64,000 bases of DNA. Origin: Macrostomum lignano. Taxonomy: Eukaryota. The stretch is from assembly GCA_002269645.1 (NCBI GenBank), contig NIVC01001834.1, positions 1 through 64,000 on the forward strand. The letters run 5' to 3'. This document shows, piece after piece, positions 959 to 63,470 of the stretch. The notes under the pieces are model-generated. The model had not been told where the DNA came from. It did not search any database and saw only the letters and a list, made by a program, of their open reading frames with translations. The position numbers and the translations under genes were made by a program. Numbering within the stretch: the first letter of the stretch is position 1; each line of letters opens with the position of its first letter.

Positions 959-1235
959 ACGTTGTCGATCTGGCCAGCGTGCGACGGCCGTCAACGTCTT
1001 GTTCGAGCTAGTCTGTCAGCGCCTCAGGGTGTACAGAGGCCCTAACTGTTTATCGGTCAGGCATGTACACTCTCTGCGCCTTGGAGTTGGCCCTAATGGT
1101 TGTGAATCGCACGACAACCTCCGGTAAGTGTGGTGAATGCGCCACCTAGTTTAGGTCTCCGCCTAGCCACCCCTGCTTAATTGTACTGCAATGTCGATCC
1201 CACCCCAAACCCTAGGCTAGGTTGAGTCGCGATTG
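959..1235 (-). mobile_element. SINE-like element sharing a central body with SINE family A (cassette copy 1)
   Basis: Shares GTGTACAG.GGCCCTAAC..TTTATCG.T.AGGCATGTACACT..CTG.GCC.TGG.GTTGGCCCT with the SINE at 50020-50290; repeated at 7441 and 16246. Confidence 0.5.
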
Positions 1236-1264
1236 ACCTTTCTCATTCGTTTATCTCACTCTAA

Positions 1265-2050
1265 AGGGAGATCGCTTGCGCCGTTACTGTCGCTTGCGCG
1301 GCTCAGCGTGCTTGGCTACGCCGACGATCTCGCCCTCCTTTCCTCCACCGTCGAGGGCGCCCAGCGCCAGCTGGACCGGCTGGTAAGCGTTGCGGCGAGC
1401 GTCGGCCTGGTGGTCAACACGCAGAAGACCGTTGTGCTCTGCGTACCGGACGACATCGAGGCTGCAATTTTCTGCCGAGGCGCAGACGCGCAGGTGACGA
1501 GGCTTCCGCGATGTCAGCAGTTCGTCTATCTCGGCGGTCTGGTGCCTGACGTTCGTGAGGACCTGCGACTTTGCTATGGATTTGCCTGTGCTGCCTTCCG
1601 TTCCGTGAGGGCTGTCCAGCAGTCCGAGGCCCTGCCTGACCGCCAGAGGGCGGCGTTGTTCCAGGCGGTGATCGAAACCGTACTGTTGTACAACGCCGAG
1701 ACCTGGACCCTGACTGATTCACTCGAACAGCAGGTCGATGCGGCGCACGCTGGCCTGCTGTGCGCCGCCTTCAAGATCGGCTACGAGCGAGTCACCAATG
1801 CGGCACTCTATCGCCACACCGGCCTGTCCCGTCCCAGCGAAATGTTGCGCCATCGGCGACTCCAGCTGGCAAGGCCATATCATCTGAGACGAGTCGTACT
1901 GCCCACAGCCGGTGCAGAAAGTGCTTTTGCTCACGCTGCAGGAACCCTACCGGCGGGGGCAGGCCCGCACTCGGCGTTTCGTCGACTGCCTGCTGGCTGA
2001 TGCCGGCGGTGCGGCCTACGTTCGCGCCCAGGCCCTGAAACGCGCCCTGT
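1265..2050 (+). mobile_element. 5'-truncated RTE/RTEX-like non-LTR retrotransposon fragment (RT C-terminal half)
   Basis: ORF 1233..2000 contains GYADDLALL...VNTQKT...FVYLGG...ETVLLYNAETWTL; frameshifted near the 3' end; same family as 61490-63470. Confidence 0.9.
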
Positions 2051-5259: not shown

Positions 5260-6349
5260 TCAAAAAACAACAGATCTCCTTCGACCCATCCTGTTCAATT
5301 CCTTGACGGCGGCATCCTGCTGGCTCTGATTGTCTTCTTCAACGGGCTGCTCTGTTAAATCGCCGTTGCTCAGTCGTCTCTGAAATTGCGGATAAACAGG
5401 GGCAGTGAATTCGGCACATCGATGGGTTTTAATGCTGAGAAACATTACAATTTAAAGCCTTATTTACCCCTTGATTGAGCAGTGTTTTTAGTAGAGGAGA
5501 CTTTTCAAAGGTGGATAAACGTTCGGTTAGCTTCAGGACTTTTTCTTTCAGTTGTCCGACTTCAATGGCCCTCTGTTTATCTCTGGTCTTGAGCTTCATC
5601 AACAAATTATTGATTTCTTTTAGTTCGGAGTCCTTTCGCTGCAGCTCCTGTTGGAAGCGCTGCACCGTGAGCTCCAGGTGGCCATCGGTACCCGAGCAGT
5701 AGTGCTCATCGAGCTGCGACATTGCCACGTTCGTCTGACACCCGATGCTCTGTCGGTACTTGCAGTCGCTCGGTCTCTCCGGACAGGTCATCAGGTGCTC
5801 CTCGAACTCCGAGCGGTACAGCCTGCTGCTCGAGTCGCTGCAGTGAGGACACGGAGCTCGGAACTCGGAGCAGCAGTGAGGAGACCGCAGATCCGTGTGG
5901 CAGCCGTTCAGCTCGAACTGACGGACTCGCTCCGAGCAGCGGTCGCACGTGACGATCTCGAACTGGCACTCGTTGGTCAGATGAGAGTCCAGCTGCCTCA
6001 AGGTGAGCTGCTTCTCACAGCCGGACTCTTCGTTCGGGCATCGGACTTCAAGTTCGAGCACGTCCTTACGTGTTGCAGTGTCGGGGAAGCAGACAGCCTG
6101 ACTCACAAAGTGCTCAACAAGTCTCGCACGGTCTCTGCAGCTGTCCAGCGAATGAATGCAGGGACAGACTCGATCGCTGGATTGCAGCAGCTCGGTGCTG
6201 AAGCACCGCTGGCACAGGCGGCATCCGTGCGGAGTCTGGTAGGAATTTATGAGCAGCTCTGAGCAGCCGCTGCACATTAAATGGTTCGGTATCGGCTTGT
6301 TTCGAATTTTGATAGAAGATAAATCGCTTCGCACTAAAGCTTGCTCCAT
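5260..6349 (-). CDS. TRAF-like protein copy 1 (atypical RING, TRAF Zn fingers, coiled coil, no MATH); exons 6349..5468 and 5379..5260, 333 aa
   Basis: ORF 5429..6349 has CSGC-x11-HGCRLCQRC, FPDTATRKDVLELEVRCPNEESGC and HLMTCPERPSDCKY. A phase-0 intron 5467..5380 (GGG|GTAAAT, CAATTTCAG|AGA) joins it in frame to ORF 5260..5445. Confidence 0.85.
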
Positions 6350-7749: not shown

Positions 7750-8520
7750 AAAGGGAGATCGCTTGCGCCGTTACTGTCGCTTGCGCGGCTCAGCGTGCTT
7801 GGCTACGCCGACGATCTCGCCCTCCTTTCCTCGACCGTCGAGGGCGCCCAGCGCCAGCTGGACCGGCTGGTAAGCGTTGCGGCGTCGGCCTGGTGGTCAA
7901 CACGCAGAAGACCGTTGTGCTCTGCGTGCCGGACGACATTGAGGCTGCAATTTTCTGCCGAGGCGCAGACGCGCAGGTGACGAGGCTTCCGCGATGTCAG
8001 CAGTTCGTCTATCTCGGCGGTCTGGTACCTGACGTTCGTGAGGACCTGCGACTTTGCTGTGGACTTGCCTGGGCTGCCTTCCTTTTCGAGGAAGTCCAAG
8101 GCCCTACCTGACCGCCAGAGGGCGGCGTTGTTCCAGGCGGTGATCGAAACCGTACTGTTGTACAACGCCGAGACCTGGGCCCTGTCTGATTCACTCGAAC
8201 AGCAGGTCGATGCGGCGCACGCTGGACTGCTGCGCGCCGCTTCAAGATCGGCTACGAGCGAGTCACCATTGCGGCACTCTATCGCCGCACCAGCCTGTCC
8301 CGTCCCAGCGAAATGTTGCGCCATCGACTCCAGCTGGCAAAGCCATTCTATCCGAGCCGAGTCGTACTGCCCACAGCCGGTGCAGGAAGTGCTTTTGCTC
8401 ACGCTGCAGGAACCTTACCGGCGGGGGCAGGCCCGCACTTGGCGTTTCGTCGACTGCCTGTTGGCTGATGCCGGCGGTGCGGCCTACGTTCGCGCCCAGG
8501 CCCTGAAACGCGCCCTGTGA
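7750..8520 (+). mobile_element. RTE/RTEX-like fragment (cassette copy 2)
   Basis: GYADDLALL at 7798; colinear with 1265-2050, with additional frameshifts. Confidence 0.9.
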
Positions 8521-11818: not shown

Positions 11819-12908
11819 TCAAAAAACAACAGATCTCCTTCGACCCATCCTGTTCAATTCCTTGACGGCGGCATCCTGCTGGCTCTGATTGTCTTCTTCA
11901 ACGGGCTGCTCTGTTAAATCGCCGTTGCTCAGTCGTCTCTGAAATTGCGGATAAACAGGGGCAGTGAATTCGGCACATCGATGGGTTTTAATGCTGAGAA
12001 ACATTACAATTTAAAGCATTATTTACCCCTTGATTGAGCAGTGTTTTTAGTAGAGGAGACTTTTCAAAGGTGGATAAACGTTCGGTTAGCTTCAGGACTT
12101 TTTCTTTCAGTTGTCCGACTTCAATGGCCCTCTGTTTATCTCTGGTCTTGAGCTTCATCAACAAATTATTGATTTCTTTTAGTTCGGAGTCCTTTCGCTG
12201 CAGCTCCTGTTGGAAGCGCTGCACCGTGAGCTCCAGGTGGCCATCGGTACCCGAGCAGTAGTGCTCATCGAGCTGCGACATTGCCACGTTCGTCTGACAC
12301 CCGATGCTCTGTCGGTACTTGCAGTCGCTCGGTCTCTCCGGACAGGTCATCAGGTGCTCCTGGAACTCCGAGCGGTACAGCCTGCTGCTCGAGTCGCTGC
12401 AGTGAGGACACGGAGCTCGGAACTCGGAGCAGCAGTGAGGAGATCGCAGATCCGTGTGGCAGCCGTTCAGCTCGAACTGACGGACTCGTTCCGAGCAGCG
12501 GTCGCACGTGACGAACGCGAACTGGCACTCGTTGGTCAGATGAGAGTCCAGCTGCCTCAAGGTGAGCTGCTTCTCACAGCCGGACTCTTCGTTCGAGCAT
12601 CGGACTTCAAGTTCGAGCACGTCCTTTCGTGTTGCAGTGTCGGGGAAGCAGACAGCCTGACTCACGAAGTGCTCAACAAGTCTCGCACGGTCTCTGCAGC
12701 TGTCTAGCGAACGAATGCATGGGCAGACTCGATCGCTGGATTGCAGCAGCTCGGTGCTGAAGCACCGCTGGCACAGGCGGCATCCGTGCGGAGTCTGGTA
12801 GCAGTTGACTAGCAGCTCTGAGCAGCCGCTGCACTTGAAGCGGTCCGGAATTGGCTCGTTTCGAATTTTGATAGAAGATAAATCGCTTCGCACTAAAGCT
12901 TGCTCCAT
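11819..12908 (-). CDS. TRAF-like protein copy 2; exons 12908..12027 and 11938..11819
   Basis: ORFs 11988..12908 and 11819..12004 are offset by exactly 6559 nt from copy 1 and keep the same splice sites. Confidence 0.85.
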
Positions 12909-20701: not shown

Positions 20702-21770
20702 TCAAATACGCCATTCAATAGACATCTTTCGCCTCATTCTGTTCGATGAAGTAATCGATTCTTTGACCACGGTATCCTGCTGGCTCTGATTGTCTTCTTC
20801 AGCGGGCTGCTCTGTCAAATCGCTGTTGCTCAGTCGTCTCTGAAATTGCGAATAATCAGGGGCAGTGAATTCGGCACATCGATGGGTTTTAATGCTGAGA
20901 AACATTACAATTTAAAGCATTATTTACCCCTTGGTTGAGCAGTTTTTTTAGTAGAGGAGACTTTTCAAAGGTGGATAAACGTTCGGTTAGCTTCAAGACT
21001 TTTTCCTGCAGTTGTCCGACCGAATTATTCATTTCTTTTAGTTCGGAGTCCTTTTGCTGCAGCTCCTGTTGGAAGCGCTGCACCGTGAGCTCGAGGTGCC
21101 CGTCGGTACCCGAGCAGTAGTGCTCATCCAGCTGCGACATTGCCATGTTCGTCTGACACCCGATGCTCTGTCGGTACTTGCAGTCGCTCGGTCTCTCCGG
21201 ACACGTCATCAGGTGCTCCTGGAACTCCGAGCGGTCCAGCCTGCTGCTCGAGTCGCTGCAGTGAGGACACGGAGCTCGGAACTCGGAGCAGCAGTGAGGA
21301 GACCGCAGATCCGTGTGGCAGCCGTTCATCTCGAACTGACGGACTCGCTCCGAGCAGCGGTCGCACGTGACGATCTCGAACTGGCACTCGTCGGTCAGAT
21401 GAGAGTCCAGCTGCCTCAAGGTGAGCTGCTTCTCACAGCCGGACTCTTTGTTCGGGCATCGGACTTCAAGTTCGAGCACGTCCTTTCGTGTTGCAGTGTC
21501 GGGGAAGCAGTCGGCCTGACTCACGAAGTGCTCAACAAGTCTCGCACGGTCTCTGCAGCTGTCTAGCGAATGAATGCATGGACAGACTCGATCGCTGGAT
21601 TGCAGCAGCTCGGTGCTGAAGCACCGCTGGCACAGGCGGCATCCGTGCGGAGTCTGGTAGCAGTTTATGAGCAGCTCTGAGCAGCCGCTGCACATTAAAT
21701 GGTTCGGGATCGGCTCGTTTCGAATTTTGATGGAAGAGAAATCGCTTCGCACTTTAAAAGCGGACTTCAT
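20702..21770 (-). CDS. TRAF-like protein copy 3; exons 21770..20928 and 20839..20702
   Basis: ORFs 20889..21770 and 20702..20905 with conserved splice sites; 14-aa deletion in the coiled coil; different N- and C-termini. Confidence 0.85.
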
Positions 21771-36884: not shown

Positions 36885-37156
36885 TTTTTCTTTCTTTCTT
36901 TCTTCTTCAGCGCTCGTCAGCGGCGCGGCGGCGCCGAAATAGACGGGGGCCAACGCCCCATGTTCCGGAGGAGCGAGAGGGCCAAGCCCGGTTCGGTGAG
37001 GAGGCGCTCCACTTCAGTGCCGACCAGGCGAGTGCGGTGCGCGTCCCCCCTCGGGCAGCTGTAGATCGCGTGCAGGCTCGAGTCCGGTGCCCCGCAGTCC
37101 TGGCAGAGCGGGGAGTCCGTCAGGCCGAAACGGTGTCGGACCTCGGCGGCGAGCAT
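36885..37156 (-). mobile_element. 272-bp 5'-truncated LINE 3' end with (GAA/GAAA)n tail and 12-bp TSD
   Basis: Encodes HRFGLTDSPLCQDCGAPDSSLHAIYSCP...LSLLRNMG (LINE ORF2 zinc knuckle); TCTGCTTCTGCT at 36873-36884 and 37157-37168. Confidence 0.9.
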
Positions 37157-38276
37157 TCTGCTTCTGCTGCTGCTGCTGCTGTTGGAGGCTGGCTGCCGCC
37201 ATCTGCAGCTTCTGCTTGTTAAAAAGGCTGCGCAGAGCTCGACGAAACTTGACGCCGAAAAAGCAGTAGAGCAGAAAGTTAATCGACGAGTTGACGACAA
37301 CCATGAACTGCGCCACGATGTAGAAGGCCTGCTGCCCGTGGCTCGGAGGCTGCGACCTGAGGGCCACGGCCCACAGGTTGTCAACTAGAGCGAACGTCTG
37401 GCAGAAGACAAAGACGACAACCACGCTAGCCAGCATGAGGCTGATGCTGCGGTCGCGGTCCTGCCGCTTCTGCTGATGGCTGTGCCGGCCGACGATGCTG
37501 CCCTGGGCTCGCCGAGTGGACTTGCGGATCTTGTGCACCAGCAGAGCGTTGGACACGGCCAGCACAAGCAGCGGCAGCACGAACATGAACACCGAGTACA
37601 TGAAGCCGTGGTAGATTCTCTGGTATAAACCATCGCCTTCCAGGCTCCAGTTGGTAACGTTGCCGTCTGAACCGGGCAGCGCGCTGACGAACCTGATCTT
37701 CTCCAGCGCCCTGGGCACATTGTACAGCGCCGTGAAGGCCAGTATGGCGACCACCACTCGGACAGCTCGGCCGCGTTTGCACCAGGCCGCCGATCGGAGC
37801 GGGAACTTGATTGACAGGTAGCGTTCAACAGTGAAACAGGTGGTGACGTACATGCTGCACATGTGGATGAACAGTGACAGCGGGTACAGCACCTTGATTG
37901 ACGGGCTATTTGACTGCATGAGGCCGGAGAACACGGCTGACACCTGCGGCAAGCCCATGCAGATGTCGAACAGCAGCAGGATCACAATGTCCAGGCTGGC
38001 CAGGGCGATCAGGTACACGGATGTTGACGAGGCCATGCGCGGGGTGAGTAGAACCCGGATGCTGAGCAGGTTGCCAGCGATGCCCAGTCCGCTGAGCCCG
38101 GTGCCGGCGCAGCCCCACAGGTAGTACTGCAGATTGTTGAGGCCCCGCAGAGCCGCCGACTTAGCGCTGCTGTTCTGCGAACTGTTCTGGAGTTTGGAGA
38201 CTGTTGATGATGGAGTCTGCGACTGGCACAGCGGCAGCGACAGGATTAGCAGCAGCAGTGGCAGCGGGTAGCGCAT
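37014..38276 (-). CDS. Class A neuropeptide GPCR (FMRFamide-receptor-like), 420 aa as present, last ~47 aa LINE-derived
   Basis: Seven hydrophobic segments with GNLLSI, LASLD, TVERY, YNVPR, FVLP, VFCQTF and NSSINFLLYC; ATG at 38276 just after the acceptor TTTACAG. Confidence 0.9.
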   Translation of the reverse strand: MRYPLPLLLLILSLPLCQSQTPSSTVSKLQNSSQNSSAKSAALRGLNNLQYYLWGCAGTGLSGLGIAGNLLSIRVLLTPRMASSTSVYLIALASLDIVILLLFDICMGLPQVSAVFSGLMQSNSPSIKVLYPLSLFIHMCSMYVTTCFTVERYLSIKFPLRSAAWCKRGRAVRVVVAILAFTALYNVPRALEKIRFVSALPGSDGNVTNWSLEGDGLYQRIYHGFMYSVFMFVLPLLVLAVSNALLVHKIRKSTRRAQGSIVGRHSHQQKRQDRDRSISLMLASVVVVFVFCQTFALVDNLWAVALRSQPPSHGQQAFYIVAQFMVVVNSSINFLLYCFFGVKFRRALRSLFNKQKLQMAAASLQQQQQQQKQNARRRGPTPFRPDGLPALPGLRGTGLEPARDLQLPEGGRAPHSPGRH

Positions 38277-38559
38277 TTTTTCTGTAAACAGAAAGTAAAA
38301 AAGCTGACGCAGGTGCAGGAAAAGCAGCTCAAAGACTGTAGGGCGTGACTCATTGAACTGCTCAGCAGAATCACTACTCATTGACTCCATCCTGTTCTCT
38401 ATTATTTCTTACTTTTTCCAAGCCAAAAATTTCCATTTTCCGCATGCAAATAATAGGTAATAATTTGGGCAAAGGTTGGACAAAACAAGAGAGGGTTGGT
38501 CAGTTTTTATGTTGACATTTTCTCTTCTCACTCTCACTTCCCCACTGTCCTCCCCCTCT

Positions 38560-44625: not shown

Positions 44626-44929
44626 GATCAATCAATTAAATATTTTTATACAAAAGCAAACATTTGACGCCAAGTTAGAAAATGGACATCCAAATTTACA
44701 AGCCTTATAGAGCTAAGACAGGTAACCATACTAATTCCTAGACCTGTCTAAATAATTAAATTTAGACAATTTTTACTAACATCATTTCTTTCATAGTGTT
44801 CTCGATCTAGTCTTTTGATTTAAAAAGACTATCAATATTTAAGCCAGGCCTACCTTAAGGCCTGATGCGCAAATCAAAAGAAATTGGACCAGCAGTTAGA
44901 GTTGGATGTTCTGCGTTCGCTTGTAAATC

Positions 44930-45725
44930 GGCCACTCTGCAGAACGATGATCCTCGCGAGGAGCGGCCGAGTTTGGCCGTCTCTGACGGAGTCGTTGCTG
45001 CTGTTCGACGCCACGTGGACGAAAATCGGCGAGTGACGATTCGCTGGTGTGAGCAGCTCGTCGGGGTGTCGGATTCCACCATCATTAAGATCCTGCACCA
45101 GCACCTCTGCATGAGGAAGCTGTCCGCTCGCTTGGTGCCCCACCCGCTCAGCCATGACCAGATGCGAGCCCGCGTTGAGTTCGCCGACCTCATGGCGACC
45201 AGATTTGACGGAGGCCGCTCAAAGTTGGTGGATAACATCCTCACTGGCGATGAAAGCTGGGTCTACTTCTATGACCCAGAGACCAAAGAGCAGAGTGGGC
45301 ACTGGGTCACCAACAAGGAAGATGCTCCTCTCAAAGTTCGTCGCGAGCGCAGCGTCAGAAAAGTGATGGCGGCCATTTTCTTCCGAAACAGCGGCATCCT
45401 GCCGCCAGTGCTGCTGCAGCAAGGCGCCACAGTGACGGCAGAATGGTACAGCACCGTCTGCTTGCCAGAGGTTCTGCAGGTGCTTGCACAGCAGCAGCCG
45501 AATACGCTTTACAAACGCATGTTCGCCCATCAGGACAACGCTCCCGCACAACCGGGCACGAGTGACCCAGGAGTTTCTTCAGGCGACCCAACTCGTCCAG
45601 CTGCCGCATCCGGCATATTCGCTTTCCCAGGATGAAGAACAATCTGAAGGGGAAGCGCTTAGACTCGAGGGAGGAGCTGGTTGTTGCGCTGCAAGCTGAG
45701 CTGGACAGCTTCACCAAGGCATTTA
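44930..45725 (+). pseudogene. Mariner (Tc1/mariner) transposase relic
   Basis: SARLVPHPL (WVPHEL-like), TGDESWVYFYDPETKEQS, HQDNAP, then a frameshift to HPAYS with the second part of the YSPDLAP motif deleted; no TIRs found. Confidence 0.9.
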
Positions 45726-55142: not shown

Positions 55143-58100
55143 ATGGATCAAAGGTGCAGGTAAAATCTCTAATACTTATACTACTAAGCAAAACCTTATT
55201 ATCTAGCCAACATAAATGACTAGCCTTAAGTCCCGTCTCCACTAACACCCACTCCACCAGCAACTCCACCAGCAACACCCACTCCACCAGCAACTCCACC
55301 AGCAACACCCACTCCACCAGCAACTCCACCAGCAACACCCACTCCACCAGCGACACCCACTCCACCAGCAACACACTCCACCAGCAACACACTCCACCAG
55401 CAACATCACTCCACCAGCAACACCCACTCCACCAGCAACACTCACTCCACCAGCAACTCCACCAGCAACACCCACTCCACCAGCAACACCCACTCCACCA
55501 GCAACACACTCCACCAGCGACACCCACTCCACCAGCAACACTCACTCCACCAGCAACTCCACCAGCAACACCCACTCCACCAGCAACTCCACCAGCAACA
55601 CCCACTCCACCAGCGACACCCACTCCACCAGCAACACACTCCACCAGCAACACACTCCACCAGCAACATCACTCCACCAGCAACACCCACTCCACCAGCA
55701 ACACTCACTCCACCAGCAACTCCACCAGCAACACCCACTCCACCAGCAACACCCACTCCACCAGCAACAACCACTCCACCAGCAACATCCACTCCACCAG
55801 CAACACCCACTCCACCAGCAACACTCACTCCACCAGCAACTCCACCAGCACTCCTCCCACCGGACTCTACGTCCGGTCTACGAATTTGTCGTAGCTCCTA
55901 CTTGGCGCCGCGTTTTCGTCGCGGAGGAGAAACACGCCCAATGGGGGTGTACGAAGAGCGCCATAACTCGGACACCGCGTCCAGCGAGCGTGATTGCACT
56001 GAAAGAGGAGCGCGTATCGGTTCTAACACCGGGGGAGCCAAGTATCCGGCCCGCTACCTCCCCGCTCTTCTGTTGCTCAAGGCCGGCGATGTTGAGACCA
56101 ACCCGGGGCCTGCTAACAGCTGCGGACACGTCAGCTGCGGCCGCCCTCTGCGCGGCAAGTTCCTCACCTGCGCGAGATGTAACAGCCGCTTCCATCTGCA
56201 GAGGGAATGCTCCGCGGGTTGAGTCGCTGGGCCGCGAATAAGGCCGCGGACGCCCAGGAATGGCACTGCGCCAATTGCGAGAACGGCCCCACCACCCAGA
56301 CAGACTCGTCGTCCTCTGACCAACCGTCCACCCCTATCTTCCAGCCCACGGAGAAGCACACCGCTCGCAGGCAAGCCCTGCTCAACCGTATCCGGCAGGA
56401 GAAACCAAAATGCAACCATTGTCGGAAACCGATGCGCGTCAGCTCCACCATCGCCTGCCGCAATGCCTGTTAAGGATTCTTCCATAACGCCTGCATGCAA
56501 GCCACGTGCGACCAGATCAAAAAAGAAATCAGTCGTGGGCTTTGGAGATGCGGTCGCTGCACCGAAGCCGCCTGCCTCCAAGGCCCGCCCGCCCTCCCCT
56601 GAGGACCCTGACCCCCACTCCTGTTTGGGGGGGGGGAGCCGCCCGGAAGCTGGGTGGGACTGCAAGAAACCCGAGCTCAAAATTATTCAATGGAATGCGG
56701 ATGGGATCAGCAACAAATGGGGGAGCTTGAGGACCTCGCATCCCGGCTTCAGGCCGACGTTATTGCGGTTCAAGAGTCGAAGCTCACCTCATTCAACAAA
56801 ACCCCCCGCATCCCGGGCTTCAGCACCATCCGCAAGGACCGTAAAAGCGCCCTCTGCGACCGAAACGTTAAATGCGGCGGCCTGCTCTTCATTATCCGGC
56901 AAGGCATTTCGTTCAATAAACTTCAAGGATGGTCTGGCGGAACCACCGAAGGCTGCAGAATTTCGATCAGCAGCTCGGCCAGACAAAAACTTGTCATCTC
57001 AAACATCTACCGCCCCCCATCCGGCGCGTGGAAGGCGAAGATCACCGTGAGTACCCCAGTGTCGATTCCTGGCTCAGATGCTTCCACAGGGAAATTCTGC
57101 TTGGTGACCTCAACCTCCACCACACTGCCTAGGGCAGCGATCCCAATCAAGGACCTAAAGGTGCAGCACAAACTCAGTGCCTGGTCGACTGGTGCAACTC
57201 CGTGGACTACCGCATCCTGAACTCAGGGGAACACACTTGTGTTGACAGGCGCACCGTACGGACTAGTGATCTCGATCTCACCATCGCTAGTCAATCAGTG
57301 GCCGACCTCTGTAAATGGCAACCGCTAACCGAGCTCGGCTCCGATCACCAACCCATCCTGGTGACAGTCCGGGAATTCCGTGAAACCCTGAGCACTGCGC
57401 CTCGCTTCAGCTGGTCTTGGAAAAAAGCGGACTGGACCGCTTACCAGACCCTGCTCTCCGAGGACGCCGACTACCTCAATGGCGGCTCCATCAAGAAACA
57501 GATTGCCAGGCTCAGCTTGGGCATGCTTAAAGCAGCCAAAGCTGCTATCCCGCTCAAAAAAGTTTCTGCCAAAAACAAGCCATACTGGGATGAAGAACTC
57601 ACTGAACTTCGCGACACTCGGAACCGGCTTAGGGAATCTGGCGCTCATCCTGGCGAGTGGCTCGAAAAAAGTCACGAACTATCCAAACTCTGTGCCGAAA
57701 AGAAAGCCGAATTCTAGAAAGGAGTACATCAACAAAATGTCCGACTCTGCCGACCCAAAACAAGTCTGGAGGACTGTCAAGTGCCTCAGAAACGGCAAAC
57801 AACAAGCTCCTCTCAATGAATCTCTCGTTGTTGATGGTCGAGAACTGCGCACGGACAAGGAAAAGGCTAACGTCTTTGGCCGCTATTACGAAAAATCAGC
57901 ACTCTGAAACACTCGGCGGTGGACCGCAAGGTCAAAGTGGCCACGTCCCGTCGACTGGCCTCCACTGACGACGACCTTTACTCCCGTGATTTCACCCCTG
58001 GTGAGCTGAAACAGGCCATTGGCAAACTTGACCCCAGCAAAAATGTGGTCCCGACGAAATCGAAGCTGCCTTATTCATCCACCTGCCGGACTCTTGGATG

Positions 58101-61100
58101 ACGGCCTGGCTGGCCGTCTTCAACCGTTGCTGGCGCACCGGACACTGCCCTGGAGTCTGGAAAAAGGCCGTTATCGTCCCCCTGATAAAGGACGGAAAGG
58201 ACCCCAAAGACCGCGGTAGCTACAGGCCTGTCAGCCTCACCTCCATCTGCAGAAAGATCCTCGAACGGCTTATCCTCGATCGTCTCTAACGCTGGCTCGA
58301 GCTCCACAACATCATTCAGCCCTGGCAAGCCGGTTTTCAACGGCGATGAAGTCGCGGCTGTGAAGAGCAAATCGCCCGCCTCGTTCAGTCAATTCAAGAT
58401 GGATGGGAGAAACGCCCGCACTTGAAAACTGTGGCCGTCCTCATCGACTGCTCTCGCGCCTTTGACCGTGTTTGGCGCGCTCGCCTTATTAGTCGCATGA
58501 TGGACGAAGGCGTCCCTGCCTGTATGGTGCGCTGGTTCACCAGCTTTTTCGAAGGCAGGCAGATCGCTGTGCGGGTCGGCTCCTCACTTGGGAAATGGCG
58601 CAGACTGAGGGAAGGCGTCCCCAGGGCGCCGTCAGCTCGCCTGCCCTCTTCCTCATCTATGTTAACAAGTGGTCCGGTCACACCGTGCCTCTCGTCGACT
58701 ACAGTGGCTATGCAGACGATCTCGCCCTCTGGAGCACAGGCCGGATCGAGGAATGGGCCGCTCATCTGCGCATCGACGTCAACCCTTCTAAAACTGAGAG
58801 ATGCCTCTTCTCTCGTGACAGATCCGACCGTCAACGCAACCTCAGCCTCACCCTCCGGGGCCTACAGATTCCTTTCAAGCAGGAGATTAAGTTTCTCGGA
58901 ATCTGGATTGACCAAGGTCAGCTATTCGAAAAGCAAACTGACTCCGTCCAGGAGAAAATGCTTTGCCGAGCTGCCATCCTCCGTGCCCCAGCCCACCGTG
59001 AATGGGGCTGGGATCGCAAGCTGCTGCTGCGAGTCTACTGGGCTCTTGTGGAATCCGTCGTGTGGCACGCCGCCGCAACCTGGACGCCTTGGCTATCTGC
59101 GACCCGTCTCAACGCCATCGAACGTGCCCAGCGTGAGGCCCTCCGGGTTGTCACTGGTCTCCCCCGCTCGACACCGGTAGAGGCCATCTACTTTGAGTCG
59201 GGAATCCTTCCTATCAGCCTCGAAGCCCGCCGAAGATCGCTGCTTGCGGTTGAGAAGGCGCTCCGAAGACCTCCCGGCGAACCCTTCCGGCAGCTTTGCG
59301 AACGCCCGCCACGACACCCTGCTTTCTGCCAACCGAGGCCTCCGCGAACAAGCTAGACGCATCACCGATGAGCTCCTTGGTGGACACCGCCTAGCCAACA
59401 GCCACATCCGGCTCCCACCCTGGAATTCGTTAGCCGACGCCGGAGGGCGCATGTTCACCAAGCTGCTGTTCGAGCCCATTGAAACCGCCGTCGCCCAGGC
59501 GGTCCAAGCCACCGCGACCGCGCGCTGCCCGAACGCCGCCACTTACTTCACCGACGGATCCGTCTCGGGTGGCGTTGAAAACGGAGGTGCGGCCTGGATT
59601 CTCCTGAGCCAGGACGGCTCTATCAGCCGGCGCGGGCGCGTGGCCGCGGGCCGCTGGTGCAGCTCCTTTGAGGCCGAACTTCCAGGCTCTAAGCGACATC
59701 ATTGCCAATGCCCCGAAAGAGGCTGCCATTCTCACCGACAGCCAGAGCGCTATCGCGGTCCTCCAAGCTGATCCCCAACCATCAACCTGCTCGTCGAGAA
59801 CGTTAACGAACGCCTTATCACCGCCGCCCGTCTTTTTAAGATCATCCTGCAGTGGATGCCCGGGCACGCCGGAATCCTCGGAAATGATGAACTGGTGGAT
59901 GCCGAGGCTAAACTAGCGGCCACGCTGCCTCAGGAACATGTCGGCACCACCCTGGATTCGGCTAGGGCCCGCATCCGCCGGGTTGTTAACCATTCGCCCA
60001 ACATGACAGGCCACCTGCTCGAGGTATGGCCAAAAGATTACGACGCATGAGGGCCCTCGCAGGCAACAGGTCTTAGGTCTGCGCCGGGCACTGTCCTGCA
60101 TCGATCTACTACCGCAACCGCACCGGCATGGAGGTCGGGGGCAACTGCCGTCTCTGCGCGGAAGAGGTCGATCAATTCCACCTTCTCAACTGCCCGGCCC
60201 TGGACGTCCAACGCCGTACTCACGGCATTACCGAAATGTGTCGACTCGCTCGCGCCGACGTGGTGGCGCTTCTCCAAGCGGCCATCGGTTGGTGTCCCCT
60301 TTAAGAGAGGGGACCGCATACAACAACTCCACCACCAATACCCACTCCACCAGCAACACCCACTCCACCACCAACACCCACTCCACCAACAACACCCACT
60401 CCACCAGCAACACCCACTCCACCAGCAATTCCACCAGCAACACCCTCTCCACTATTAAAACTTCAGCCGGAGTTGCGACCCCTGCTTGCTAGGTACTGGC
60501 CGCTGCTCGTGCTCAGCTGGTGCATGGAGCTCAGTCTTGGCGCAGCCATCTCAATGCCCGGACCGACGCTGCCTTACCTGGCCTTGAAAGTCTCTGAACC
60601 AATCGAACGTCTCGGTTTTATGTTCACGGGCAGTTCACTGACCTCCTGCTTAGCTGCCTGGCTGACTGGCCTGGCCTTGGCTCGACTCACTGATAGCAGT
60701 CGGGTTAAATTAATCGGCTTGTTGCTAGGCAACGGGCTCCTAGTTGCTGCCCTAATTGCGACGCCTTCGGCTGACTCGCTTGCTGGACTAATCGCGGCCC
60801 AGTGCACAATGGGAGCTGGAGTTGCCGTAATTTCTACAGGTATGTCTTCGCTGCTGAATGCAAGGAAGTGTTCACTTTTTAGCCAAATTTACAATATCTT
60901 ACCTCACGGACCACTAGAAGTTACCGTTGTACTGTTATTTTTATCGGTACGAGTATAACGGTAACTAGTGATCCTTATGCATGTACGGTGATAAAAGCAT
61001 CTTTCCCGCCTGCAGTGGACAACATGCTGATGATTTACTTGTTCGGCCCGATCCTATCCCGCTCTCTGTCGCATTCTCTGCACTTCTGCGTCGGACTTGG

Positions 61101-61489: not shown

Positions 61490-63470
61490 GGGACCCGGGG
61501 CTTGTGAGGCATATCGACTTCTGCTCTGCGACTTGCGGCTCTACGACCAGCTCTACCGACCGCCAAAGCAGCAGCCACGGCGCTACTATCGCGCTCTGTC
61601 GGACACCCGCGTGAAGCGTCAATTCGCGGACACCTTCGCTTGGAAACCAGCGCGAGGCGGAGTATTTCGACATCAGCACCGCCGTTAGAGCTGCTGCAGA
61701 GCAGACGGTCCCGCTGATGCGGCCAGCGCAGAAATCGCTGACTATCTGGCAGAGCGACCCAATCATCAGGCAGGCGCAGCTCAACATTGAGCGACTCCGC
61801 AGAAACCGACGGCCCACGGGCGACGCTGAACACGCGTTTAAGCGCCTTTGAGATGAGCGCAGGAATGAATTGCGCGACTTTTTCGCCGGCATCGTGAACG
61901 CGCCCGCGTCGCCGCTGCCTTCCAGTTTTGCGCTCCCACTGGACACGCCACTCCCAGCTGAGGAGGACTTCTGCACCAGCCCAGTCACAACGGAGGACGT
62001 TGTGCTGTTCGCTCGAAAAAAATCAGGCTGCAAGGCGCTCGGCCCCGATAAAGTCCCGGTCAAAGCGCTGCGGCTCCGCTGTGTGGCCTCTCAGGTCACA
62101 GGCGTCATGAACCGCGTGCTCGCCGGCGCCCCTGCGCCCTCCGAATGGACCGTCGCGCACATCGTGCCGATCCCGAAGAAGGCAGGGACAACGCGGAAAG
62201 AAGACCACCGCGGGATCTCGCTGATGTTCTGCACCGCGAAGCTCTTCAACCAGCTGCTGCTCGATCGCCTGCAGTCGGTTTTGGACCCGTACCTGCGGTA
62301 CGAGCAGAACGGATTCCGGCCGCAACGCGGTACATTGACACAGATTCTCGAACTCCGCCGTGTCATCGAGGAGGCGCGCATCCGCCGGGCTACGCTGATC
62401 ATTGTCTTCGTTGACTCTCGAAAGGCGTTTGATTCGGTGTTGAGAGCCGCGCTTCTCTTTGTCCTTCGAATCTATTTGGTACCCCAGCAGCTAATCGACG
62501 CTGTCATGGCGCTGTATTGCAACACTCGAGCTGATGTGGTGACGGCGGACGGCCTGTCTGACCTGTTCGACACTTCATCAGGAGTTCTGCAGGGCGACAC
62601 GCTAGCGCCGTTCCTCTTCGTGCTGCTGCTAGACTGGGTGCTTCGGACCGCACTCCCCTCGGCTAATGACGGTTTTCTGCTGCGCAGACGCATCGGTCGC
62701 CGCTACGGCAAAAAGCGCTTGAGCGTTCTTGGCTACCCTCCTGTCCTCGTCCGTTGGAGGCGCCCAGCGCCAGATCGTCAGGTTGGTCGATGTGGCATCG
62801 AGCGTCGGTCTGGTTGTCAACACGCTGAAGACCGAGGTGCTGAATGTGCCGGCCGAAATCCCAGCGGACCTTGCCGCGGCGCAGACGGGCAGACGACGAA
62901 GCTCGCACGCTGCCAGCGGTTTACCTACCTAGGCGGTCTGGTGCCCCACGTGGAGGAAAACCTCCGGCAGCGCAGAGGACTTGCCTGCGTGGCCTTCCGT
63001 TCGATCCGGGCCGCCGTCCAGTCCGAAGCGCTGCCCGACCGCCAGGGGGCTCGGCTGTGATAGGCGGTGGTCGAAACCGTCCTGCTATACAACGCCGAGA
63101 CGTGGACGCTGGCGGCTACGCTGGAGCGGCAGCTGGACTCGGCGCACTCAGGGCTGCTCTGTGCGGCCTTTCGAGCTGACGAGAGCGTCGGGACCAAGGC
63201 CCTGTACGATCGGGCCAAGCTGCAGCGCCCATCCTTCATCATGCGCCAGCGGCGACTTCATCAACTGGCGGATCACGTGATTCGGGCCGAGGGCTACTGC
63301 CCCCAACCTGTTCAGGACGTCCTGCTGCTCACCTTGCAGGGCCCGCTCAGGGGGGGGGGGGTCAGGCCCAAACCCGTCGTTACGTAGACTGCCTCCTACG
63401 CGCGCCAACGGGGCGGACTTCGTCCACTCTCAGGCTCTGCGGTGCGCCATCAGACGCACCCTGCTTTGTG
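61490..63470 (+). mobile_element. 5'-truncated, decayed RTE/RTEX-like LINE (end of APE plus RT)
   Basis: HRLLLCDL; ORF 61870..63060 with GPDKVP, RGISL, EQNGFRP, VDSRKAFDS, GVLQGDTLAPFLF; YADD motif deleted; related to the cassette RTE fragments. Confidence 0.9.

What the first reader, a model, noticed from the sequence alone, without database searches (positions are those of the whole stretch)
55851..55963. HDV-like ribozyme fold starting exactly at the first base of the LINE
Seen: P1 CUCCUCC (55851-57) pairs perfectly with GGAGGAG (55923-29); P2 UGGCGCC pairs with G(A)GCGCCA; P3 GCG/CGC encloses L3 UUUUCGU, compared with HDV UCCUCGC; the usual CC/GG P1.1 is replaced by a compensatory UU/AA; P4 is ACAC-CCC/GGG-GUGU; J4/2 is A-C-G-A-A with C55952 in the catalytic position. 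J1/2 holds two extra perfect hairpins (ACCGGAC/GUCCGGU, CUACGA/UCGUAG). The predicted cleavage site coincides with the minisatellite/LINE boundary. Established: HDV-like ribozymes process the 5' ends of L1Tc/ingi, R2 and some RTE elements. Inference: an animal ingi-like family with the same strategy. The fold looks intact although the ORF is dead, so it could cut the host pre-mRNA if it lies in a sense intron.
Basis: partly seen in the sequence, partly recalled or inferred. Interest (0 to 1): 0.8.

Follow-up and report, generated by a model that had tools for sequence, protein, structure and literature searches.

The report
HDV-like ribozyme heading a LINE
The first 113 bases of a decayed animal jumping gene (a LINE) fold like the self-cutting RNA of hepatitis delta virus. 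Related LINEs from other animals keep the same fold with different helix sequences, so it is a real but familiar device for trimming the element's RNA to its exact 5' end.

Summary
It is the only site in the 64 kb window that fits a strict HDV-like descriptor (0 of 200 shuffles for the strictest form).

Target-site duplication puts the LINE's first base at 55851, which is the predicted cleavage site.

The decisive evidence comes from relatives. I fetched LINEs with the same build (leader, 2A peptide, PHD fingers, APE, RT, RNase H) from other animal contigs. At least 12 further loci carry an HDV-like fold at the same place, upstream of the 2A motif on the sense strand.
- P1, P2 and P3 differ in sequence but stay paired (154 of 160 cells, against 35-46% when slid).
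- L3 (U...CG) and J4/2 (C-G/A-A-A) are conserved.
- A covariance model built without the window finds 55902-55964 as its only window hit (E about 1e-3).

Rfam 15 finds nothing.

Departures from the canonical ribozyme are a C-G pair instead of G.U at the cleavage site, a U-A P1.1, and a 45-nt J1/2 insert unique to this copy.

The "ingi-like" label and cutting of a host pre-mRNA remain untested, and catalysis has not been shown. I rate it a new member of a known kind.

The parts
55244..55850 (+). Minisatellite (unit ACTCCACCAGCAACACCC and 12-nt variants), the insertion target. Its CTCCACC words at 55828-34 and 55840-46 are one mismatch from the P1 5' strand.
55841..55850 (+). 5' copy of the target-site duplication, TCCACCAGCA
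   Evidence: the reconstructed empty site restores the repeat unit
55851..55857 (+). P1 5' strand CUCCUCC. The predicted cleavage is 5' of C55851, the first base of the LINE.
   Evidence: duplex -11.5 kcal/mol
55858..55902 (+). J1/2 insert of 45 nt. It holds two perfect hairpins (55859-77 and 55878-94) and a proximal alternative P1 strand CUCCUAC (55895-901). Relatives have J1/2 of 0-16 nt.
55903..55909 (+). P2 5' strand UGGCGC + C
55910..55922 (+). P3 (GCG/CGC) enclosing L3 UUUUCGU. L3 U1, C5 and G6 are conserved in all relatives. L3 nt 2-3 form P1.1 with A55930-31.
55923..55931 (+). P1 3' strand GGAGGAG (55923-29) and J1/4 AA (55930-31, the P1.1 partners)
55932..55950 (+). P4 hairpin ACAC(G)CCC-AAU-GGG(G)GUGU. 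It contains the first in-frame ATG (55941-43).
55951..55957 (+). J4/2 A-CGAA-GA with the putative catalytic C55952. The same CGAA is in genomic HDV (from my memory), and relatives have C-G/A-A-A.
55958..55963 (+). P2 3' strand GCGCCA (plus G55956 pairing with C55909, A55957 bulged)
56067..56111 (+). 2A 'StopGo' peptide LLLLKAGDVETNPGP, in the frame that is open from before nt 55851 through the whole ribozyme
55851..60327 (+). Whole decayed LINE (4477 bp): leader-2A-PHD-like fingers-APE-RT-RNase H-CCHC. About a dozen frameshifts and several stops. 3' tail ACAACAAC at 60320-27.
60328..60337 (+). 3' copy of the target-site duplication, TCCACCACCA; the minisatellite then resumes to about 60428

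Best explanation
Positions 55851-55963 are the HDV-like self-cleaving ribozyme that forms the 5' end of a non-LTR retrotransposon family built as leader-2A-PHD-APE-RT-RNase H.

Proposed mechanism, inferred by analogy with R2, R4/Dong, Baggins, RTE and L1Tc. Active members are transcribed by read-through from upstream DNA. The nested double pseudoknot (P1, P1.1, P2, P3, P4) folds, and C55952 in J4/2 catalyses cleavage just 5' of C55851. This releases an uncapped 5'-OH RNA that starts at the element's first base, which is why inserted copies begin there.

Shown here: the reading frame is open through the ribozyme, often has no AUG, and runs into a 2A StopGo peptide. Inferred from that: translation probably starts non-canonically or upstream, and 2A discards the ribozyme-encoded leader so the LINE protein begins at a fixed proline.

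The window copy is a dead element: its ORF is shattered by frameshifts. Its ribozyme keeps every helix and all conserved core bases, so it may still cut any sense transcript that crosses it.

Also shown here: fold, position, conservation and covariation. Inferred: catalysis, 5'-end processing and the role in translation.
For: (1) All pairings are present and it is the only strict descriptor hit in 128 kb of strand. The strictest descriptor gave 0 hits in 200 shuffles.

(2) The cleavage site coincides with the LINE boundary defined by TSD and empty-site reconstruction.

(3) Relatives with 43-53% RT identity, or found with an N-terminal profile, carry an HDV-like fold 104-237 nt upstream of their 2A, on the sense strand only. 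These are L001, L004/L005, L006 (twice), L007, L008, L009, L010, L011, L012, L013, L016 and L019. The chance of any hit in such a 350-nt stretch is 0-1.4% per locus (1000 shuffles each); 9 of 12 loci hit, and none on the antisense strand.

(4) Several lie exactly at junctions: after (CAA)n tails of upstream copies (L006, L008), after (CAG)n (L011), and where another LINE's APE ORF is interrupted (L001).

(5) Covariation. P1 63/68, P2 49/50 and P3 30/30 cells are paired, with 2-4 pair types per column. The first P1.1 pair is 10/10 with 4 types. In register 154/160 pair, against 56-73/160 when slid and 49% with swapped partners. Helix strands are about 40% identical, while L3 plus J4/2 are 72% identical. 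On an Infernal alignment, 89.6% are paired against 60.6% shuffled, 8 of 10 pairs have double changes, and 0 of 500 shuffles reach the score.

(6) A covariance model built only from L006, L007, L008 and L010 finds window 55902-55964 as its sole window hit (19.4 bits, E about 1e-3).

(7) The 2A frame is open through the ribozyme to beyond +1 in 13 of 13 loci, and 7 of 13 have no in-frame ATG.

(8) Literature: HDV-like ribozymes process the 5' ends of R2, R4/Dong, Baggins, RTE and L1Tc (PMC3774820, PMC6765202, PMC3185411). The L3 G and U are conserved core bases (PMC3774820). L1TcRz is active with a 1-bp P1.1 (PMC3185411). Large J1/2 domains can activate HDV-like ribozymes (PMC4908430).
Against: No cleavage assay has been done.

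Rfam 15 gives no hit, even at E<=10 on 55700-56100, and none in the first six related loci searched, L001-L006.

The cleavage-site pair is C-G, not the G.U wobble that binds the catalytic metal in HDV (reference title cited in PMC3185411). P1.1 is two weak U-A pairs.

The 45-nt J1/2 is found in no relative. A proximal P1 strand at 55895 would give the family-typical short J1/2, so the cleavage site is not unique in principle.

No second copy from the same genome was available, so the 5' end at 55851 rests on one TSD inside a repeat.

My descriptor was loosened after seeing relatives, and helix registers were chosen for pairing.

Three relatives show no intact fold (L003) or a damaged one (L007, L009). 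Fifteen more distant 2A-LINE loci gave no hit.
Confidence: 0.85

Rival explanations
1. The fold descends from a ribozyme, but this copy, or its whole C(+1) subgroup, no longer cleaves or cleaves very slowly. It would then serve, or once served, only as a structured 5' leader for translation initiation or protein binding.
For: There is a C-G pair instead of G.U at the cleavage site, a U-A/U-A P1.1, and bulges in P2 and P4. The element is otherwise dead. In R2 the ribozyme region also binds R2 protein and is proposed to act like an IRES (PMC6765202). The frame is open through the ribozyme.
Against: The C-G pair at +1 is shared by five relatives in independent contigs (L010, L004, L013, L011, L016), with covarying P1 below it. 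That argues it is a tolerated, selected state. All core bases (L3 U, C, G; J4/2 C, A, A) are intact, and L1TcRz works with a 1-bp P1.1 (PMC3185411).
Confidence: 0.15
2. The working P1 uses the proximal strand CUCCUAC (55895-901), so cleavage falls at 55894/55895. The first 44 nt would then be an add-on, not part of the minimal ribozyme.
For: All relatives have J1/2 of 0-16 nt and most have 0-3 nt. The proximal strand sits 1 nt before P2. In one sequence context the MFE fold uses it.
Against: It has a mismatch and a much weaker duplex (-6.4 against -11.5 kcal/mol). The inserted copy begins at 55851 with a perfect P1 strand, which is what an RNA cleaved there would give. The 44 nt hold two perfect hairpins, unlike random filler.
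Confidence: 0.12
3. It is a chance resemblance: a GC-rich LINE 5' UTR that happens to fit the HDV topology.
For: A loose descriptor gives 0.69 chance hits per 64 kb. The relaxed one also hits 8060-8126 (+) and 54272-54208 (-) in the window. Rfam finds nothing.
Against: The fold recurs at the homologous place in 12 or more related loci, with different helix sequences and a conserved core. The leave-one-out covariance model hits it, and it coincides exactly with the LINE boundary.
Confidence: 0.02

Closest known systems
L1TcRz, the HDV-like ribozyme in the first 77 nt of Trypanosoma cruzi L1Tc (L1Tc/ingi clade)
   Same: The ribozyme forms the first bases of a single-ORF APE-RT-RNase H LINE whose ORF carries an N-terminal 2A peptide. 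The cleavage site is the element's +1. P1.1 is weak (PMC3185411, PMC3708506).
   Different: The host is an animal. PHD-like fingers lie between 2A and APE. No sequence comparison with Pr77 could be made here, and no promoter function is known. The window copy has a 45-nt J1/2 insert. Clade membership was not tested.
R2, R4/Dong and Baggins/RTE 5' HDV-like ribozymes of animals
   Same: The topology and role are the same: release of the element RNA from a co-transcript at or near the 5' junction. The L3 core bases are conserved, P1 and P2 covary, and P4 is dispensable, as in L011 here (PMC3774820, PMC6765202). Dong cleaves after its (TAA)n target, much as L006, L008 and L011 sit after CAA/CAG repeats.
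   Different: The LINE clades and protein architecture differ (R2 and R4 have a restriction-like endonuclease and no 2A). R2 often cleaves upstream, inside 28S.
Genomic HDV ribozyme
   Same: The order is P1-J1/2-P2-P3-L3-P3'-P1'-P1.1-P4-J4/2-P2'. L3 is U..(N)CG. and J4/2 is C-G-A-A. This comparison is from my memory of the HDV sequence; the role of L3 G/U is supported by PMC3774820.
   Different: C1-G replaces G1.U37. P1.1 is U-A/U-A, not C-G/C-G. The long structured J1/2 is absent from HDV. No Rfam HDV or HDV-like model matches.
Large HDV-like ribozymes with a J1/2 peripheral domain (PMC4908430)
   Same: A structured insert lies between P1 and P2. Such domains are reported to bring P1 and P2 together and to activate the ribozyme.
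   Different: Whether the two hairpins here help, hinder or are neutral is unknown. No relative shares them.

Membership tests
HDV-like self-cleaving ribozymes (structural class) | Nested double-pseudoknot strand order: P1, (J1/2), P2, P3, L3, P3', P1', P1.1, P4, J4/2, P2' | tested here: met
   Sequence reading and descriptor scans. P2 and P3 are aligned the same way by an independent covariance model.
HDV-like self-cleaving ribozymes (structural class) | Cytosine at the first position of J4/2 (the C75 equivalent), followed by N-R-A | tested here: met
   C55952-G-A-A. All 10 parsed relatives have C-G/A-A-A. A decoy-descriptor control (C changed to A, G or U) was uninformative because of the flexible spacers.
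HDV-like self-cleaving ribozymes (structural class) | 3-bp P3 closing a 7-8 nt L3 with conserved U (first) and C-G (positions 5-6) | tested here: met
   GCG/CGC with UUUUCGU. The same holds in all 10 parsed elements, but this was part of my refined descriptor. The importance of the L3 G and U is stated in PMC3774820.
HDV-like self-cleaving ribozymes (structural class) | P1.1 of 1-2 bp between L3 and the bases after P1 | tested here: met
   U55914-15 with A55930-31. The first pair forms in 10 of 10 elements with four pair types, the second in 4 of 10.
HDV-like self-cleaving ribozymes (structural class) | G.U wobble at the cleavage-site pair. This is typical of HDV and CPEB3, and I treat it as frequent rather than defining. 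| tested here: not met
   C55851-G55929. Among the 10 parsed elements, 5 have C-G, 4 have G.U and 1 has A-U. The further relative L016 also starts with C. The effect on rate is unknown.
HDV-like self-cleaving ribozymes (structural class) | [quoted passage not shown] | not testable with these tools
   Needs transcription and cleavage assays.
Curated Rfam HDV-type families (HDV, CPEB3, drz-*) | Match to a family covariance model | tested here: not met
   There were no hits at gathering score in the window or in related loci L001-L006, and none at E<=10 on 55700-56100. It is therefore not a member of those sequence families, only of the structural class.
5'-terminal ribozymes of non-LTR retrotransposons | The cleavage site coincides with the element's first base, in sense orientation | tested here: met
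   TSD and empty-site reconstruction. Relatives sit at (CAA)n, (CAG)n or interrupted-ORF junctions.
5'-terminal ribozymes of non-LTR retrotransposons | Conservation with compensatory change across family members | tested here: met
L1Tc/ingi clade of LINEs | Single ORF with N-terminal 2A, then APE, RT and RNase H | tested here: met
   2A at 56067-56111. APE, RT and RNase H are found by Pfam on ORF pieces, on a stitched sequence and in intact relatives.
L1Tc/ingi clade of LINEs | RT-domain phylogenetic placement within Ingi | not tested
   No reference LINE set was available, and the supplement of PMC3708506 is not held. PHD fingers after 2A are reported for CR1, Crack and STR elements (PMC3708506), so the clade stays open.

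The most novel reading that the evidence does not exclude
The ribozyme, the AUG-less leader translated straight through it, and the 2A peptide may form one portable 5' expression cassette for promoter-less LINEs. It would be shared by trypanosome L1Tc and a broad set of animal LINEs. The ribozyme would set the RNA 5' end, translation would start without a fixed AUG, and 2A would erase whatever was translated upstream.

The same family appears to target CAA/CAG/CCA-type repeats. The window's P1 3' strand can also pair with the target repeat (CTCCACC), which hints at R2-like use of target sequence in P1.

A C-G cleavage-site pair kept in half the members would further mean that the G.U metal site is dispensable in a natural lineage.
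Probability: 0.3. Interest if true: 0.65.

Novelty: new member of a known kind. Interest (0 to 1): 0.5.

Why it matters
HDV-like ribozymes at LINE 5' ends are established for R2, R4/Dong, Baggins, RTE and L1Tc. This finding adds a widespread animal family with a 2A-PHD-APE-RT-RNase H build, and no Rfam 15 model matched the window or the first six related loci. In the papers I could read, the study of 2A-bearing animal LINEs (PMC3708506) never mentions a ribozyme.

It offers a ready alignment for a new covariance model. It provides a natural series of C-G, G.U and A-U cleavage-site pairs for testing the role of the wobble. It also shows that the ribozyme is itself translated and followed by 2A, which bears on how uncapped LINE RNAs are expressed.

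For genome annotation it gives a precise marker of full-length 5' ends. I could not read Webb 2009 or Ruminski 2011, so prior description of some members cannot be excluded.

Tried and rejected
- **Rfam:** scans at gathering score and at E<=10 gave no hits.
- **First protein search:** a stitched N-terminal query found one chimeric protein only, though that locus (L001) later proved to hold a ribozyme.
- **MAFFT on whole ribozymes:** it misaligned the helices. I therefore used a manual parse checked against the genomic sequence and a 4-sequence core alignment for the covariance model.
- **Catalytic-C decoy descriptors:** not discriminating, because the flexible spacers let A-C-G-A match.
- **Host organism:** exact look-up of five window proteins found none in the collection, so the organism is unknown.
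- **Neighbouring gene:** a PDB search with the downstream exon-like ORF gave only weak, irrelevant hits.
- **Papers not held:** Ruminski 2011 and Webb 2009, and the supplement of PMC3708506 with reference RT sequences. No clade phylogeny was possible.
- **Other descriptor hits in the window:** 8060-8126 (+), inside another LINE's RT coding region with a 2-bp P4, and 54272-54208 (-), AT-rich with a P1 mismatch. I judged both to be chance. Neither is found by the covariance model.
- **L003:9847-9882:** a weak covariance-model hit (E 0.047) that is not convincing on inspection.
- **Minisatellite as a coding exon:** rejected. All three frames lack stops, but the frame of the repeat drifts.
Full report
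**1. The observation**

- P1: CUCCUCC (55851-57) with GGAGGAG (55923-29).
- J1/2: 45 nt with two perfect hairpins, ACCGGAC/GUCCGGU and CUACGA/UCGUAG.
- P2: UGGCGC(C) (55903-09) with (G)A-GCGCCA (55956-63).
- P3: GCG/CGC around L3 UUUUCGU (55913-19).
- J1/4: AA (55930-31), able to pair with L3 U-U as P1.1.
- P4: ACAC(G)CCC/GGG(G)GUGU (55932-50).
- J4/2: A-CGAA with C55952.

The non-pseudoknotted part is the minimum-free-energy fold, with z = -2.5 against shuffles.

A descriptor I wrote for the HDV topology returns this site and no other on either strand of the window. In 200 dinucleotide-preserving shuffles of the window:
- the loose form gives 0.69 hits per window;
- a stricter form gives 0.095;
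- the strictest form (all-Watson-Crick P1, P2 of 7 or more, L3 ....CG) gives 0.

The motif alone is therefore suggestive rather than conclusive. Position and relatives decide the case.

**2. The LINE and its boundary**

Downstream lies a decayed LINE of 4477 bp (55851-60327). The frame that is open from its first base encodes, in order:
- a leader;
- a 2A StopGo motif, LLLLKAGDVETNPGP (56067-56111);
- Cys/His fingers;
- APE, RT, RNase H and a CCHC motif.

It carries about a dozen frameshifts and some stops.

The element ends in ACAACAAC (60320-27), and the same minisatellite resumes after it. The flanks TCCACCAGCA (55841-50) and TCCACCACCA (60328-37) form a 10-bp target-site duplication. Deleting the LINE plus one copy restores the 18-nt repeat unit. 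The predicted cleavage site is thus the first base of the insertion, as claimed.

This rests on one copy inside a repeat, because no second copy from the same genome could be obtained.

**3. Relatives**

Protein searches with a stitched RT, and later with an N-terminal profile, found relatives only in unannotated animal contigs. I fetched their DNA and 30 more loci from metagenomes. The relatives share the build leader-2A-PHD-APE-RT-RNase H.

A refined descriptor was anchored on L3 = U...CG. It hit only the window site plus L004/L005 and L006 among the first loci, always on the sense strand upstream of 2A.

Reading the other 5' regions by eye, and relaxing the descriptor, added L001, L008, L010, L011, L012 and L013. 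L016 and L019 came from the metagenome set.
- L007 has the fold with two A.C mismatches in P1.
- L009 has a mutated L3.
- L003 has none recognisable.

With the relaxed descriptor, any hit in the 350 nt upstream of a 2A motif occurs in only 0-1.4% of 1000 shuffles per locus. Nine of 12 independent loci have one, and none has one on the antisense strand.

Several sites sit exactly at junctions:
- after the (CAA)n tails of upstream copies (L006 twice, L008);
- after a (CAG)n run (L011);
- at the point where another LINE's endonuclease ORF is interrupted (L001).

**4. Covariation**

I parsed ten elements into segments that concatenate back to the genomic sequence.

| Helix | Cells paired | Pair types per column |
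|---|---|---|
| P1 | 63/68 | 2-4 |
| P2 | 49/50 | 2-4 |
| P3 | 30/30 | 2-4 |
| P1.1, first pair | 10/10 | 4 |
| P1.1, second pair | 4/10 | 3 |

- L3 is always U-N-N-N-C-G-N(N).
- J4/2 is always C-G/A-A-A.

In register, 154 of 160 helix cells pair. Sliding the 3' strands by 1-3 nt leaves 56-73 of 160. Pairing one element's 5' strands with another's 3' strands gives 49%. Helix strands are about 40% identical between elements, while L3 plus J4/2 are 72% identical.

The registers were chosen for pairing, so I also made a model-based test. A covariance model was built from the cores of L006, L007, L008 and L010 only, with P2 and P3 as structure. It found the following:
- Window 55902-55964 is its only hit in the window (19.4 bits, E about 1e-3).
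- L009 and L012 are recovered.
- A previously unseen copy appears at L006:6468-6526. It follows a (CAA)n tail and precedes a degenerate 2A.

On the resulting alignment, 89.6% of cells pair against 60.6% in shuffles. Eight of 10 pairs have changes on both sides. The covariation score is 0.707 against 0.187, with 0 of 500 shuffles as high. Slid registers give 29-45%.

**5. How it most likely works**

By analogy with R2, R4/Dong, Baggins, RTE and L1Tc (PMC3774820, PMC6765202, PMC3185411), the ribozyme cuts a read-through transcript just 5' of the element's first base.

Observed here: the 2A frame is open through the entire ribozyme to beyond +1 in 13 of 13 loci. Seven of those have no in-frame AUG between +1 and 2A. 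For about 80 codons each, this is far from chance, so the ribozyme region appears to be translated.

Inferred from that: 2A would then free the LINE protein from the leader. Catalysis and this translation scheme are not shown here.

**6. Differences from the canonical ribozyme**

- The cleavage-site pair is C-G, not G.U. Among the ten parsed elements, five have C-G, four have G.U and one has A-U; L016 also begins with C.
- P1.1 is U-A/U-A.
- The 45-nt J1/2 is unique to the window copy; relatives have 0-16 nt.
- A proximal strand, CUCCUAC (55895-901), could form a weaker P1 (-6.4 against -11.5 kcal/mol). That gives a possible second cleavage site.
- The minisatellite's CUCCACC words could compete as well.
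- No Rfam model matches.

**7. What is not supported or not testable**

- The label "ingi-like" fits the domain order, but no phylogeny was possible. PHD fingers after 2A are reported for other clades (PMC3708506).
- That the fold is intact while the ORF is dead is not surprising for 113 nt.
- Whether the LINE sits in a sense intron is unknown. A hydrophobic exon-like ORF (about 60527-60958, + strand) follows it, but no gene model exists.

**8. Verdict**

This is a genuine HDV-like ribozyme module at the 5' end of an animal LINE family. It is a new member of a known kind, with some instructive variations. Catalysis remains to be shown.

Noticed in passing
L006:6420-6467 and 12510-12540; L008:2900-2952; L011:1-54; L007:2913-2942; window 55244-55850: Family members sit directly after CAA, CAG or CCA-type micro- or minisatellites, or after the (CAA)n tail of an upstream copy (head-to-tail arrays in L006). 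The window LINE's own tail is ACAACAAC. This suggests target preference for such repeats, or tail-to-target microhomology.
   Followed up: partly
L001:10375-10395, L004:7803-7812, L006:12674-12682, L007:3078-3084, L008:3089-3096, L010:367-373, L012:386-392, L013:294-302, and most of L017-L038: A run of 5-7 T, usually flanked by G, lies 60-110 nt upstream of the 2A codons in nearly all relatives, including distant families without a recognisable ribozyme. The window copy lacks it. The cause is unknown: a peptide motif such as VFL/FFG, or an RNA or DNA signal.
   Followed up: no
window 55851-56111 and 12 related loci: The 2A reading frame is open through the whole ribozyme to beyond +1 in 13 of 13 loci, and 7 of them have no in-frame ATG before 2A. 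In the window the first in-frame ATG (55941) lies in the P4 loop.
   Followed up: yes
window 61870-63060 (+), 1233-2000 (+), about 8000-8400 (+): These are pieces of a second, different LINE family (RT domain). The relaxed descriptor hit at 8060-8126 lies inside its RT coding region and looks like chance.
   Followed up: partly
window 5429-6349 (-), 11988-12908 (-), 20889-21770 (-): Three tandem paralogous intronless ORFs with TRAF-type zinc fingers. There is also a rhodopsin-type GPCR ORF at 37014-38390 (-) and a mariner/Tc-like transposase remnant at 44865-45635 (+). None of five long ORFs is in the protein collection by exact look-up, so the source organism is unidentified.
   Followed up: partly
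window 60473-60958 (+): A hydrophobic, transmembrane-looking ORF (possible first coding exon, ATG at about 60527) begins about 200 nt after the LINE on the same strand. It has no Pfam or PDB match. It bears on whether the ribozyme could cut a host transcript.
   Followed up: partly
L003:4300-4780; L007:2943-3007; L009:3076-3174: These are decay states of the module. L003 has 2A but no recognisable fold. L007 keeps the core but has two A.C mismatches in P1. L009 has L3 changed to UUCCUGG and an unclear P2.
   Followed up: partly
L015, L017, L020, L022-L029, L032, L035, L038, L041 (upstream of their 2A motifs): More distant 2A-bearing LINE families from metagenomes gave no hit with the descriptor or the covariance model. 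Their 5' leaders may hold a different structure, or none.
   Followed up: partly
L001:10001-10618: The database protein P0001 is a chimera. It joins the start of one LINE's endonuclease to the ribozyme-encoded leader, 2A and PHD finger of a second LINE inserted into it.
   Followed up: yes
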